Of a stretch of 64,000 nt of DNA, positions 33,234-36,199 are shown piece by piece. The translations under genes were made by a program, and so were the position numbers. Positions within the stretch are counted from its first letter, which is position 1, and each line of letters opens with the position of its first letter. Below the pieces are notes generated by a model that made no database searches, was not told the DNA's origin, and saw only the letters and a list, made by a program, of their open reading frames with translations. The stretch comes from Salpingoeca rosetta (lineage: Eukaryota > Protista > Choanoflagellata): the NCBI GenBank assembly GCA_033442325.1, contig JAWQFM010000008.1, forward strand, positions 1,372,123-1,436,122. The letters run 5' to 3'.

Positions 33234-36199
33234 GCCAGTTGAAGACGTCAATGGATTCGACGATGACAGACAGATCCATGCTGTCGGCGCCAAACGTAGA
33301 CGGCTCGTCCTTGTTGAACTCATCTCCCATGAGGGAGTGCAGGGTGGTGGTCTTGCCAGCACGCCCCTCGCCAACCAGCATCAGCTTGGCACGCCCTGCC
33401 ATCTGCGTGTCTGAATGTTGTGCAATCTGGTGCATCGCCGCCATCACCTCGGCTTTGCGCTCCTGTTGAGCCTGCGAACGGCGGTGGGCATGACGGAAGA
33501 TGGCCGATGAGATGAAGAAAAGCAAGTATGCGAGGAGTGGCACTGGGGTTATGGTTCGCATTGCTGGGCACTCACATCAGCAGGACCGTCGTGGGCTGGA
33601 GCTGCTGGGTCGGCAGGAGGTTCCATCGCAGCCTGTATCGATGGAGATCGAGTCGAGAAAAGGTGTGTGAACATTGAAGTTGTGGGAAGGAAGCGGAGAC
33701 AAGCGACGCAGCATGAATGGCAGAGATAGACGGGCGCACGATTGTGGCAACAGCAATATGCAAGGTGTGCGCACCTGTGGATCAGATAGAATGGCAACGA
33801 CGGCGTCGTGTCCTTCATCGCGTGCCAAATCCAGCGGCGTCATGCCGGTGCCCTGGAGTTGGACCATAGCAGGGACACGCGCACGTCAGATGGTCATCGT
33901 TGCGACAAGGGGCAGGGCGAAACCAGGGCAGGCCGACCACAGTAAGCACACATTAAATTTCGTACGGGGTGCTTGACGGTTGGATCAGCGCCGGAGTGGA
34001 GAAGACAGCGGACGACATCGGGGTGATTTTTGAAGCTGGCGACGTGCAGTGGGGTCCACCCCTACCCAGCAACCAAGCACAAGCAAGTGGCAATGGGCTG
34101 ACGAAGGAAAAGCAAGGCGAGCAGTAGTACGTTGACAAGGGTATGTGCTAAGCGGTGACAAGTGACTGTGCAGCGCATACATTGTTCGTCGGCCGATTGA
34201 CGTCGGCTCCCTTCTCAACAAGGAACCGCGCAACCGCCCCATGTCCGTTGCGGCCCGCAATCCACAGCGGCGTCCAACCCTGTCACACACACCACACAAG
34301 CATTCATCACATGAAACACACGAGGTACAACACAACACAGCAAGCAGGCCAACACACAAGCCATCAACCACGACGAAGTGAGTACACACCGGGAACTTCC
34401 TCATCTCTGTATGTACAATTGCTTGCACGCCATTCTAACCCACATGCTACCAGTGTGCATCAACCACCACACCCCTTCCACACACTCACACCAAAGGGCT
34501 CCACAGAGCACCAGGCACACCACAAACTGCCACAGCCACAGCAACAACACCATTATCACCACAAAGCCACACGGACAAGTACATCAATGCAACAGGAGGC
34601 CGTATCAAAACAACGTACAAATTCTTTGTCTGCCTGGTTGACGTCGGCTCCCTTCTCAACAAGGAACCGCGCAACCGCCTCGTGGCCTTTCTGACTCGCA
34701 ACGTACAGCGGTGTGAAGCCCTGTCACAACACGTCAACACACGCACACACATACATTCGAAGCACACCAAAACAAGCAGTGTGACACCACAAACCATCAC
34801 CCACAACAAAGTGAGGCAGTGAGTACAAACCGAGCGAGAAAACCTTCCTCATCCCTCTATGCATGAGTGCTTTGCATGCCATTCTCCTCCCACCCACATC
34901 AAGGCGCTTCAAAGTGCATCAGGCAAACCACAAATTGTGACAACCACAGCAAAAGCAGTATCACCACAAACACATGCAACGTACGTTCTTGTGTGCCTGG
35001 TTGACATCGGCTCCCTTCTCAACAAGTAATCGTGCAACTGCCTCGTGACCGTTCTGACTCGCAATCCACAGCGGTGTCCAACCCTGTCACGCACACCAAA
35101 CACCAAACACGCACATTCATCACATCACACAACACAGCAAGCAGGCAGACACCACAAACCATCAACCACGACAACGTGAGGCACAGTGAGTGCACACCGG
35201 GAACTTCCTCATCTCTGTATGTACAATTGCTCGCATGCCATTCTAACCCACATGCTACCAGTGTTTGCAGGCCATCACCACAAACCACACATTGCCCAGA
35301 CCACAAACTATGTCAACCACAGCAACAACGACAACAACACAAACATGGGTGAGCACACCACCAGCAACATGTGACTGTCACAACGCACATCGTTGTCTGC
35401 CTGGTTGACGTCGGCGCCCTTCTCCACAAGGAACCGCGCAACTGCCTCGTGACCATAGAAGCCTGCAATCCACAGCGGTGTGAAGCCCTGTGACACACAT
35501 CAAACACATAGCAAATACACGTCATCCAATCAGGGCACACAGCGAAGCAAGGCACCCCGCCGTAGTGCGTAGGAACAGGGATGCAAGCATACATGCACAA
35601 CACCGTGAGGTCAACACGCAAACACTTATTCTCAGACCCAGACCTGAATGCCAAAGTCACACGCGACATGTGATCAAATGCTATTCATCAGCACTTGACA
35701 AGACCTCCAGAAACAAGATAGTAGCAAAGCGGAGACCAACCACAACAGGTCACAAGTTGAGACATTGGGAACTCACTTCTTTGTCAGTGTTGTTGACGTG
35801 CGCTCCCTTCTCAAGAAGAAACCGTACAACCGCCTCGTGGCCGTTGCGACTAGCCCAGTACAGCGCAGTACCGTCCTGCACAATGGCGAGTATGAAGCGA
35901 TTGAAGTGAGGGCAGTTGTCTTCGTCATCAAGGCATGCATAGATATTCGCACAAGCAGTTGTGAACGAGTCGTAGATAAGGGCCAGCGAACTCACGCATT
36001 CGCTGTCCTTCTCGTCGTCCACATGTCGGTTTGCTGGAGCGAACTCTGCCACCAGCGTCTCGACGCACTCCAGGTCTCCTGTCGCGCTCGCATCGATCAA
36101 CGACGTTATGCCATCAAAGCTAATCGGCACCCCAATCGAAGGTCCGTCAACAGCATAACCGGCTTCTTCGGCTTCACGGCTTGTCGTGCCTCCCATCAT
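29667..36199 (-). CDS. Roco protein: ankyrin repeats - Roc GTPase - COR - TIR - SAM-like
   Basis: About 7-8 ANK exons (TPLWIA..NGHEAVARFLVEKGADVN); P-loop KLMLVGEGRAGKTT; FDLGGQ; WLSSL..GAPVLIIGT; COR in 30657-32211; TIR YDAFISYR..VFVDANNLEAG..DNVLLEW; C-terminal DFEEWLSSLSL..GVPVGAAARLIHAF. Confidence 0.9.
33966..35875 (-). repeat. Tandem array of single-ankyrin-repeat phase-0 exons with homologous introns
   Basis: Exons 35777-35875 (99 bp), 35389-35487 (99), 34985-35083 (99), 34619-34720 (102), 34181-34279 (99), 33966-34061 (96), each bounded by AG/GT. Confidence 0.9.

What the first reader, a model, noticed from the sequence alone, without database searches (positions are those of the whole stretch)
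33966..35875. Ankyrin sensor built from interchangeable one-repeat exon cassettes, with an intron block more conserved than the exons
Seen: six consecutive exons of 96-102 bp each encode one ankyrin repeat in phase 0, so any can be skipped, duplicated or swapped without frameshift. Repeat frameworks are near-constant while helix-1 and hairpin positions vary (WIAGFY / WIASQN / YVASQK / WIAGRN; ends ADND / AHKN / ADKEF / PTNN). An 80-bp intron block at 34377-34456 matches 35185-35264 at 77/80, whereas the corresponding exons (34181-34279 vs 34985-35083) differ at about 22/99 nt. A diverged third copy lies at ~34818-34885. These introns also lack the long pure CA tracts seen elsewhere. Known: these are the ligand-contact positions of ankyrin repeats, and exon-per-repeat shuffling has been described for brown-algal LRR-ROCO genes. 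Inference: a recombination/gene-conversion or splicing-based receptor-diversification system in a close relative of animals.
Basis: partly seen in the sequence, partly recalled or inferred. Interest (0 to 1): 0.85.

Follow-up and report, generated by a model that had tools for sequence, protein, structure and literature searches.

The report
Tandem ankyrin exons with a gene-conversion patch
A choanoflagellate ANK-Roc-COR-TIR gene encodes one ankyrin repeat per 99-base exon, and its repeated exon-plus-intron units have swapped patches of sequence, which is ordinary repeat-gene evolution and not a dedicated receptor-diversifying machine.

Summary
On the minus strand, six consecutive phase-0 exons of 99, 99, 99, 102, 99 and 96 nt each encode one Pfam ankyrin repeat. 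RNA contigs confirm five of the six introns that bound these exons exactly. The 80-nt intron block is 77/80 identical between introns B and D, with a decayed third copy in intron C.

The block occurs nowhere else in the 55-Mb genome. It matches no Rfam family, folds no better than shuffled sequence, and is absent from most transcriptome assemblies.

Introns B, C and D are homologous, so the repeated unit is exon plus intron. The block's divergence (3.75%) is about ten times lower than exon synonymous divergence (pS about 0.36-0.39). Which copies are closest changes along the unit. That mosaic indicates gene conversion or unequal crossing-over.

Paralogous ANK-ROCO genes show the same one-exon-per-repeat design and similar patchwork. 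No exon skipping, no cassette-number variants and no dN/dS above 1 were found. A diversification "system" is therefore not supported. Evolutionary-scale cassette duplication and conversion is supported, paralleling brown-algal LRR-ROCO genes.

Two side observations: spliced antisense RNA whose donor sits at the block's edge, and a stop-containing partial retention of intron A. The scan had already noted this same stretch (s1-434441).

The parts
35996..36199 (-). First coding exon. ATG at 36199, then MMGGTTS...; it ends with an N-cap-like ankyrin half-repeat.
   Evidence: ORF and GT donor at 35995. RNA joint 35874 to 35995. No Pfam hit.
35777..35875 (-). Exon A, 99 nt, ankyrin repeat 1. Conserved by position across paralogues.
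   Evidence: Pfam Ank 35.4 bits. RNA joints on both sides. Groups with C28_r1 and C36_r1.
35488..35776 (-). Intron A (289 nt). It is not homologous to introns B-D. An internal acceptor at 35644 is used in RNA contigs, leaving 35488-35643 retained with in-frame stops.
35389..35487 (-). Exon B, 99 nt, internal ankyrin repeat (GFTPLWIAGFY...).
   Evidence: RNA joint 35082 to 35388.
35084..35388 (-). Intron B (305 nt), homologous to introns C and D.
   Evidence: Alignment A1; exact RNA joint.
35185..35264 (.). 80-nt block, copy in intron B.
   Evidence: 77/80 identical to 34377-34456. Only two copies in the genome.
34985..35083 (-). Exon C, 99 nt, internal ankyrin repeat (GWTPLWIASQN...).
   Evidence: Pfam Ank 39.7 bits; RNA joints.
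34721..34984 (-). Intron C (264 nt). It holds the decayed third copy of the block at about 34813-34885, with the 5' half deleted.
   Evidence: exact RNA joint.
34619..34720 (-). Exon D, 102 nt, internal ankyrin repeat (GFTPLYVASQK...).
34280..34618 (-). Intron D (339 nt), homologous to introns B and C.
   Evidence: exact RNA joint.
34377..34456 (.). 80-nt block, copy in intron D. Its plus-strand start, A|GTGAGT, is used as a splice donor by an antisense RNA.
   Evidence: plus-strand GT..AG joint 34377 to 34507 in run X19.
34181..34279 (-). Exon E, 99 nt, penultimate ankyrin repeat (GWTPLWIAGRN...RPTNN).
33966..34061 (-). Exon F, 96 nt, ankyrin repeat conserved by position across paralogues.
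   Evidence: Pfam Ank 41.5 bits. Groups with C28_r7 at 100/99 support. RNA joints.
33775..33852 (-). Exon G, 78 nt, last (C-cap-like) ankyrin repeat.
29667..33561 (-). Rest of the gene: Roc GTPase (33109-33561 and 32502-32990), COR-A and COR-B (30654-32375), and a weak TIR match (29667-30470).
   Evidence: Pfam: Roc 32.4 bits, COR-A 67.8, COR-B 22.7 (below cut-off), TIR_2 19.0 (below cut-off).
34378..34506 (+). Intron of an antisense (plus-strand) transcript, with GTGAGT...CAG ends and ACTCAC about 20 nt before the acceptor.
   Evidence: Low-depth contig in X19; sequence read.
34981..35137 (+). Second antisense intron. It removes the antisense of exon C.
   Evidence: GT..AG joint in an X20 contig.

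Best explanation
This is the N-terminal ankyrin array of an ANK-Roc-COR-TIR (ROCO) gene of a choanoflagellate. The genome is 55.4 Mb; the species was not identified here, and Salpingoeca rosetta is my guess from that size.

The internal repeats B-E arose by tandem duplication of a roughly 400-bp unit made of one 99-nt phase-0 exon plus its intron. Because the units stay similar and adjacent, they keep exchanging sequence by gene conversion or unequal crossing-over. This leaves a mosaic.

The 80-nt block, with about 50 nt next to it, is one such patch shared by introns B and D. Either it was homogenised recently, or it keeps the young age of a two-unit duplication whose other parts were since overwritten. 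It looks 'more conserved than the exons' because the exon pairs carry the older divergence.

Shown: the exon structure, the homology of the introns, the uniqueness of the block, the local excess of identity, and the change of nearest relative along the unit. Inferred: the recombination mechanism, and that the block has no function of its own. The variable residues on the presumed binding face fit a sensor role for the array, but that role is untested.
For: - Introns B, C and D align along their length, so the unit is exon plus intron.
- Exon synonymous divergence among B-E is pS 0.36-0.39 (dS about 0.5-0.56), against 3/80 in the block. Permutation gives 7/20000.
- Informative sites favour B=D in 21 of 28 sites across the block and its 3' neighbour. 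Elsewhere B=D, C=D and B=C are mixed, and the 5' intron part favours C=D.
- The third copy, in intron C, has decayed: 77% identity and a 41-nt deletion. This argues against constraint on the sequence itself.
- The block is unique to this gene. It has no Rfam match and no fold better than shuffles. It is absent from the X17/X18 transcript contigs and from seven other transcriptome-like assemblies.
- Paralogues show the same patchwork in other places. C28 r4/r5: exon 94/99 identical, intron 310/313. C28 r2/r6: exon 97/99, but the introns before them are only moderately similar and those after them unrelated. The C13 four-exon duplicate is 1085/1121 identical.
- Only consecutive exon joints are seen in RNA. 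The same locus sequence is held in DNA runs of several studies.
Against: - No second species or strain could be examined, so purifying selection on the block cannot be excluded directly.
- The block ends in ACTCACT. All three intron copies keep this motif about 100 nt before the acceptor, at the edge of a 114-121-nt AG-free zone. That could mark a distant branch site.
- The block's plus-strand start is a used antisense splice donor.
- The parts of the introns outside the block are GT-rich and of low complexity. They may diverge faster by slippage, which exaggerates the contrast within the intron, though not the contrast with synonymous sites.
- The direction and date of the conversion are not resolved.
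Confidence: 0.65

Rival explanations
1. Selection keeps the exons different while recombination homogenises the units. On this view the family is a fast-evolving receptor repertoire. Conversion tracts survive in introns, but selection for distinct binding faces purges them from exons, which remain as 'islands of divergence'.
For: - The variable codons coincide with the positions usually randomised on the ankyrin binding face (positions recalled from memory of DARPin design). Their pN is 0.41, against a framework pN of 0.087.
- In C28 r4/r5, a tract about 500 nt long at about 99% identity carries its only exon changes in codons 2, 31 and 33. By path-averaged counting, 4.5 of the 5 nucleotide changes are nonsynonymous. 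Exon 5/99 versus intron 3/313 gives Fisher p = 0.02.
- dN/dS is about 1.0 among the C28 internal repeats.
- The genome holds at least 24 ANK-ROCO loci.
- The concept is described for other paralogues (PMC3728101 abstract) and for brown-algal ROCOs (PMC3341825).
Against: - In this gene the exon pairs differ as much at synonymous sites (pS 0.36-0.39) as elsewhere. Selection on residues cannot explain why the exons are more diverged than the block.
- Binding-face pN is about equal to framework pS, which looks neutral and is not above 1.
- The sample is only 6 codons by 4 exons.
- The codon-2 difference in C28 lies at the tract boundary and is shared with neighbouring units, so it may itself be mosaic.
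Confidence: 0.15
2. The block is a functional intronic element kept by purifying selection. It could be a splicing signal for the sense gene (a distant branch site plus enhancer), or part of the antisense transcript (a splice donor or exon).
For: - ACTCACT is retained in all three copies, 99-103 nt upstream of the acceptor, at the 5' edge of an AG-free zone of 114-121 nt.
- The plus-strand donor A|GTGAGT at 34377/34378 is used in an X19 contig. An X20 contig reads through the other copy as an antisense exon.
Against: - The third copy has lost its 5' half and is only 77% identical, yet intron C is spliced exactly.
- A branch site or a donor needs about 7-10 nt, not 80.
- There is no structure signal and no Rfam hit.
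- The block is absent from the transcript contigs of X17/X18 and from most transcriptome assemblies.
- The antisense evidence rests on single contigs of depth about 3.
Confidence: 0.12
3. It is a splicing-based or somatic cassette-choice system that produces many receptor variants from one gene.
For: All internal exons are symmetric phase-0 and 99-102 nt long, so any could be skipped or repeated in frame.
Against: - Only consecutive joints B-C, C-D, D-E and E-F are seen in two runs.
- Assembled contigs from the DNA runs of several studies, 2013-2024, hold 98% of the locus's sampled words.
- No flanking silent cassette store was found. The block and the introns are unique to this gene.
- Contigs do drop rare variants, so low-level skipping is not excluded.
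Confidence: 0.03
4. It is an assembly artefact of a collapsed or mis-joined repeat.
For: Tandem units of about 400 bp at about 80% identity can mislead assemblers.
Against: - RNA contigs match with zero differences and with exact canonical joints.
- Sixteen runs from six studies hold 98% of the sampled words.
- The units are diverged enough to assemble uniquely.
Confidence: 0.02

Closest known systems
Brown-algal LRR-ROCO candidate receptors with one repeat per exon (Zambounis et al. 2012, PMC3341825; follow-up PMC11378527)
   Same: Both are ROCO (Roc-COR) genes in an expanded family. In both, the N-terminal repeat domain is built from one repeat per short phase-0 exon of constant length. Repeat number differs among paralogues, and variable residues lie on the presumed ligand face.
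   Different: - The repeat here is ankyrin (99 nt), not LRR (72 nt) or TPR.
- The effector side here has a weak TIR match.
- The lineage is a choanoflagellate.
- No intronic inactivated or reverse-oriented repeat exons were seen, and positive selection and exchange between loci were not demonstrated.
- Alternative splicing of the cassettes was not seen.
Vertebrate ankyrin genes (ANK1/2/3), where most of the 24 repeats are encoded by single 99-bp exons (recalled from memory: Gallagher et al. 1997; not retrieved here)
   Same: Exon boundaries fall at the same place in the 33-residue repeat, the exons are symmetric, and the array grew by exon duplication.
   Different: Those arrays are old and their introns are unrelated. 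Here three introns are still alignable and carry a recent identity patch.
Non-allelic gene conversion between tandem paralogous segments (e.g. PMC3966223, PMC3790853, PMC3728101; titles and abstracts seen)
   Same: There is a short tract of near identity inside older, more diverged duplicates. Relatedness changes along the alignment, and the partners lie in cis within 1 kb.
   Different: The partners here are repeat units inside one gene, and the tract lies wholly in introns. The tract direction and the recombination machinery were not tested.
Somatic cassette-assembly receptors (lamprey VLR)
   Same: The only shared feature is the idea of repeat cassettes that set binding specificity.
   Different: There is no silent cassette store, no incomplete germline gene, and no DNA variation among runs. 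This locus is not a member.

Membership tests
Ankyrin repeat (Pfam PF00023) | 33-residue helix-turn-helix-hairpin motif that scores above the curated cut-off | tested here: met
   Exons A, C and F scored alone give 35.4, 39.7 and 41.5 bits against a cut-off of 21.1, covering model positions 2-32.
ROCO protein family | Roc GTPase directly followed by a COR domain in one gene | tested here: met
   Roc 32.4 bits (cut-off 27) at 33109-33561. COR-A 67.8 bits (cut-off 35.3) at 30654-32375. COR-B 22.7 bits, below its cut-off of 27. RNA contigs link the ankyrin exons onward to 33358.
TIR-domain effector proteins | TIR domain above the family cut-off, with a catalytic glutamate | tested here: inconclusive
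   TIR_2 scores 19.0 bits, below its cut-off of 28. The catalytic residue was not examined; that belongs to another finding.
Exon-shuffling ROCO receptors (brown-algal type) | Each repeat encoded by one exon of constant length, phase 0 on both sides | tested here: met
   Six exons of 96-102 nt with AG|G...|GT boundaries, five introns confirmed by RNA. The same design is seen in the C28, C4, C36 and C13 arrays.
Exon-shuffling ROCO receptors (brown-algal type) | Exon exchange or discordant exon trees within and between loci | tested here: inconclusive
   Within the gene, relatedness changes along the unit. Between loci, the first and last repeats group by position, and the internal repeats are unresolved with 99 nt each.
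Exon-shuffling ROCO receptors (brown-algal type) | Positive selection on ligand-face residues | tested here: not met
   By the Nei-Gojobori method, omega is 0.31 overall. The six binding-face codons have pN 0.41 against framework pS 0.36, which is neutral-like. The only hint is in the C28 paralogue. Power is low.
Exon-shuffling ROCO receptors (brown-algal type) | Alternative splicing of the repeat exons | tested here: not met
   Only consecutive joints appear in the X17/X18 contigs. Contigs cannot show rare isoforms.
Gene-conversion tract | Local identity excess bounded by more diverged flanks | tested here: met
   3/80 mismatches against a 21% mean over the alignment; 7 of 20000 shuffles reach it.
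Gene-conversion tract | Change of nearest relative along the alignment | tested here: met
   B=D in 21 of 28 informative sites in alignment columns 264-412, mixed elsewhere.
Intronic small RNA (snoRNA or other Rfam family) | Family match, or a stable conserved fold and presence in RNA | tested here: not met
   No relevant Rfam hit at E up to 10. Fold z-scores range from -0.8 to +1.4. Transcript contigs of X17/X18 give zero depth on both copies.

The most novel reading that the evidence does not exclude
The 24 or more ANK-Roc-COR(-TIR) genes of this choanoflagellate form an immune-receptor-like repertoire. In it, single-repeat exon cassettes are duplicated and exchanged by conversion, while selection keeps binding-face residues different. 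That would be a convergent counterpart of brown-algal LRR-ROCOs and of plant and animal NLRs in the closest unicellular relatives of animals. The intron identity patches would be the footprints of that ongoing exchange.
Probability: 0.2. Interest if true: 0.65.

Novelty: new member of a known kind. Interest (0 to 1): 0.3.

Why it matters
As it stands, this is a clean textbook case of how repeat proteins grow. One exon equals one repeat, the unit is duplicated together with its intron, and later conversion blurs the history.

Its wider value is as an entry point to a large ANK-ROCO family with TIR-like ends in a close relative of animals. If that family proves to be fast-evolving and ligand-sensing, it would bear on the origin of animal innate immunity. 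Nothing here yet shows that.

The practical lesson is that 'an intron more conserved than the exons' inside a tandem array is expected from patchy conversion. It should not by itself be read as a functional element or a diversification device.

Tried and rejected
- Rfam scan of 33000-37000 at E up to 10 gave only a chance viral sisRNA hit.
- RNA folding of all three copies on both strands was no better than shuffles.
- Box C/D or H/ACA reading of the block by eye: no C plus D box pair, and the block is too short for H/ACA. Rejected.
- Poison-exon reading. A possible 57-nt AG...GT segment inside the block would bring an in-frame TAG. No RNA contig supports it, so it was set aside.
- Mobile-element reading. 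The block has only the two copies in this gene, and the introns match nothing else in the genome. Rejected.
- An exact-match scan of metagenome contigs for the 35-nt block core found nothing.
The family count therefore rests on hit coordinates only.
- Literature searches for a report of choanoflagellate ANK-ROCO genes, or of one ankyrin repeat per exon, found nothing directly relevant. One search was a malformed query.
- A second sequencing-run run found raw-read RNA runs X29-X31, but the single read-laying run was already spent.
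Full report
**What is there.** The gene lies on the minus strand. Reading the reverse complement and checking frames and boundaries gives the following structure.
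- A first exon runs from the ATG at 36199 to 35996.
- Six exons follow: A 35875-35777, B 35487-35389, C 35083-34985, D 34720-34619, E 34279-34181 and F 34061-33966. Their lengths are 99, 99, 99, 102, 99 and 96 nt.
- Each begins right after an AG and ends right before a GT, and each is in phase 0.
- A 78-nt exon G (33852-33775) closes the array.
- Scored alone, exons A, C and F each match one Pfam Ank repeat over model positions 2-32.
- Downstream pieces match Roc, COR-A, COR-B (weak) and TIR_2 (weak). The protein is therefore an ANK-Roc-COR-(TIR) ROCO protein.
- The genome has 55.4 Mb in 68 contigs. My guess is Salpingoeca rosetta, which I did not verify.

**RNA check.** Contigs from two transcript-like runs (X17, X18) give exact joints with GT..AG on the minus strand for introns B (35084-35388), C (34721-34984), D (34280-34618), E (34062-34180) and F (33853-33965), and for the intron before exon A.
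- All the joints in the array link neighbouring exons. No skipped cassette appears.
- The expected A-to-B joint is missing. In its place the contigs join 35776 to 35643 and read on through 35643-35488 into exon B.
- That retained piece has four in-frame stops, so the assembled isoform is unproductive.
- Contigs drop rare variants, so the productive joint may still exist.

**The block.** The 80 nt at 34377-34456 (intron D) and 35185-35264 (intron B) are 77/80 identical.
- A whole-genome search finds only these two copies.
- The whole 1.3-kb array matches other loci only through its exons.
- The third copy, in intron C (about 34813-34885), is 77% identical over what remains and lacks the 5' half.
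- There is no Rfam family and no fold better than shuffled sequence on either strand.
- Both copies have zero depth in the X17/X18 contigs.
- Seven further transcriptome-like assemblies hold none of the sampled words of a 141-nt stretch centred on the intron-B copy.
- A stable small RNA is therefore unlikely.

**Why the block stands out.** Aligning exon-intron-exon pieces shows that introns B, C and D are homologous along their length, while intron A is not. The duplicated unit was one exon plus its intron, about 400 bp.
- Among exons B-E, the Nei-Gojobori synonymous difference is 0.36-0.39 per site (dS about 0.5-0.56) and dN/dS is 0.31.
- The alignable intron parts outside the block differ at roughly a third of their sites and carry many indels.
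- Against that yardstick, 3 differences in 80 nt is about ten times too few. P is below 1e-9 for a mismatch rate of 0.30 or more, and 7 of 20000 permutations of the mismatch positions reach it.
- The next 48 aligned nt are also 90% identical.
- The nearest relative changes along the unit. In the block and its neighbour, 21 of 28 informative sites unite B with D. In the 5' intron part C and D are closer, and in the exons all three patterns are mixed.
- A local tract of young sequence inside older duplicates, with switching relatedness, is the standard signature of non-reciprocal recombination between tandem repeats.
- I cannot say whether the block was recently converted, or whether it preserves a young two-unit duplication whose other parts were overwritten. 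Either way conversion or unequal crossing-over is required, because synonymous sites cannot be driven apart by selection on residues.

**Context in the genome.** COR-A matches 53 places, 37 of them near full length.
- At least 24 of those 37 have a strong Ank match 1-6 kb upstream on the same strand. This is a lower bound, since only 150 of 605 candidates were scored.
- Four other arrays were read in detail: C28, C4 and C36, all next to COR-A, and a large non-ROCO array on C13. All use the same 99-nt AG|G...|GT exon per repeat.
- The first repeat (W_A, C28_r1, C36_r1) and the last repeat (W_F, C28_r7) group by position. The internal repeats are specific to each lineage or unresolved.
- The number of internal repeats differs: 4 here, 5 in C28, 3 in C36.
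- The closest paralogue in the COR-TIR part (C11, 85.6% over 2.5 kb) has different ankyrin repeats and no B-E cassettes.
- Patchwork is general. C28 r4/r5 have exons 94/99 identical and introns 310/313 identical. C28 r2/r6 have exons 97/99 identical, but the introns before them are only moderately similar and those after them are unrelated. The C13 four-exon duplicate is 1085/1121 identical with identical peptides.
- Identity islands thus fall sometimes on exons, sometimes on introns and sometimes on both. That fits random conversion tracts better than a special intron element.

**Selection.** The residues that vary among B-E are positions 2, 6-7, 9-11 and 28-33. They include all six positions that, as I recall, are randomised in designed ankyrin binders.
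- Their pN (0.41) is about five times the framework pN (0.087), but it only equals the framework pS (0.36).
- This fits relaxed or diversifying evolution and proves neither.
- The one suggestive case is C28 r4/r5. Inside a tract about 500 nt long at about 99% identity, the only exon changes lie in codons 2, 31 and 33, and 4.5 of the 5 nucleotide changes count as nonsynonymous (Fisher p = 0.02).
- Codon 2 sits at the tract edge and is shared with neighbouring units, so it may be mosaic too.

**Stability.** Sixteen runs from six studies dated 2013-2024 hold 98% of the sampled words of 33700-36300. Thirteen of them look like DNA and may include the source strain; the other three are of uncertain kind. 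This gives no hint of somatic or culture-level rearrangement, though word shares cannot exclude minor forms.

**Rival readings of the block.** All three intron copies keep ACTCACT 99-103 nt before the acceptor, at the upstream edge of an AG-free zone of 114-121 nt. This could be a distant branch site.
- On the plus strand the block starts with A|GTGAGT. A low-depth X19 contig splices from exactly there to 34507 (GT..AG).
- An X20 contig splices 34980 to 35138 and reads through the other block copy.
- Spliced antisense RNA therefore exists at low level.
- Either role needs only a few nucleotides, not 80. Intron C is spliced correctly with a decayed copy.
- I give functional constraint about 0.12.

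**Comparison with what is known.** The design of one repeat per phase-0 exon in an expanded ROCO family, with variable ligand-face residues, matches what Zambounis et al. described for Ectocarpus LRR-ROCO genes (PMC3341825, read; see also PMC11378527).
- The differences are the repeat type, the TIR-like tail and the lineage. Positive selection, exchange between loci and alternative splicing are also not demonstrated here.
- One ankyrin repeat per 99-bp exon is also, from memory, the rule in vertebrate ankyrin genes.
- Divergence islands and identity tracts among converting paralogues are well described (abstracts of PMC3728101, PMC3966223 and PMC3790853).
- I found no paper on choanoflagellate ANK-ROCO arrays. 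One preprint mentions a cADPR-producing TIR from Salpingoeca rosetta; its figure legend abbreviates Roc and COR domains without tying them to that protein.

**Verdict.** The best explanation is ordinary tandem exon-plus-intron duplication followed by patchy gene conversion. The 'diversification system' reading is not supported beyond evolutionary-scale cassette turnover. Interest is modest. It would rise if raw-read or long-read data showed cassette isoforms or copy-number variants, or if family-wide codon models showed diversifying selection.

Noticed in passing
window 35488-35776 (minus strand): Transcript contigs of X17 and X18 splice intron A only from 35776 to an internal acceptor (CAG at 35646-35644). 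They retain 35643-35488, which is 156 nt, in frame, and has four stops. The acceptor is followed by GT (cag|GTCTGG), like a recursive-splicing ratchet site. This could be an unproductive isoform or a two-step splicing intermediate. The productive A-B joint was not seen.
   Followed up: partly
window 34333-34612 and 34914-35259 (plus strand): Low-depth contigs of X19 and X20 carry GT..AG joints on the plus strand, with introns at 34378-34506 and 34981-35137. This is a spliced transcript antisense to the ankyrin array. Its exons lie in the sense introns, and one of its introns removes the antisense of exon C.
   Followed up: partly
window 34280-34400, 34721-34842, 35084-35202, 35488-35623: Long AG-free zones of 114-135 nt precede the acceptors of introns A-D. 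Intron F has only one internal AG, near its 5' end. Introns B-D have ACTCACT at the upstream edge of the zone. This may point to distant branch sites in these GT-rich introns.
   Followed up: partly
L020 (G000:C28:853000-862999), exons starting at 4948 and 4536, minus strand: In a paralogous ANK-ROCO gene, two adjacent units are 99% identical through the intron (310/313). Their exons differ only in codons 2, 31 and 33, and almost all of the five nucleotide changes count as nonsynonymous (4.5 of 5 by path-averaged counting). This is a hint of diversifying change at hairpin positions, or of micro-conversion.
   Followed up: partly
L023 (G000:C13:805000-814999), 2246-9937, plus strand: A very long ankyrin array of at least 23 single-repeat 99-nt exons, not next to a COR domain. 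It contains a four-exon tandem duplicate of about 1.26 kb (7619-8712 versus 8880-10000) that is 1085/1121 identical with identical peptides.
   Followed up: partly
L024+L026 (G000:C11:182000-198000): This is the closest paralogue of the COR-TIR part (85.6% over 2.5 kb). It has different, fewer ankyrin repeats. A Rab/Ras-like open frame (ALIGNKCDL...ETSAKTGENV) lies about 3 kb upstream on the same strand. It may be a neighbouring gene or a fused small GTPase.
   Followed up: no
window 33371-33400: 32-nt contigs of very high depth (195-250) occur in X19 and X20 inside the Roc-coding exon. Depth is also raised in X17 and X18. They are probably words shared with other, more highly expressed genes, perhaps the ROCO paralogues.
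   Followed up: no
window 36199-36180 (minus strand): The protein starts MMGGTTS. If the second Met is used, the N-terminus MGGTTS fits the N-myristoylation pattern (Gly2, Ser6). That would suggest a membrane-anchored ROCO protein.
   Followed up: no
window 28899-29068, 30592-30638, 32325-32487, 33138-33231: Long (CA)n/(GT)n tracts of 47-170 nt fill stretches between the coding pieces of the Roc-COR-TIR part of the same gene. The ankyrin-array introns have none.
   Followed up: yes
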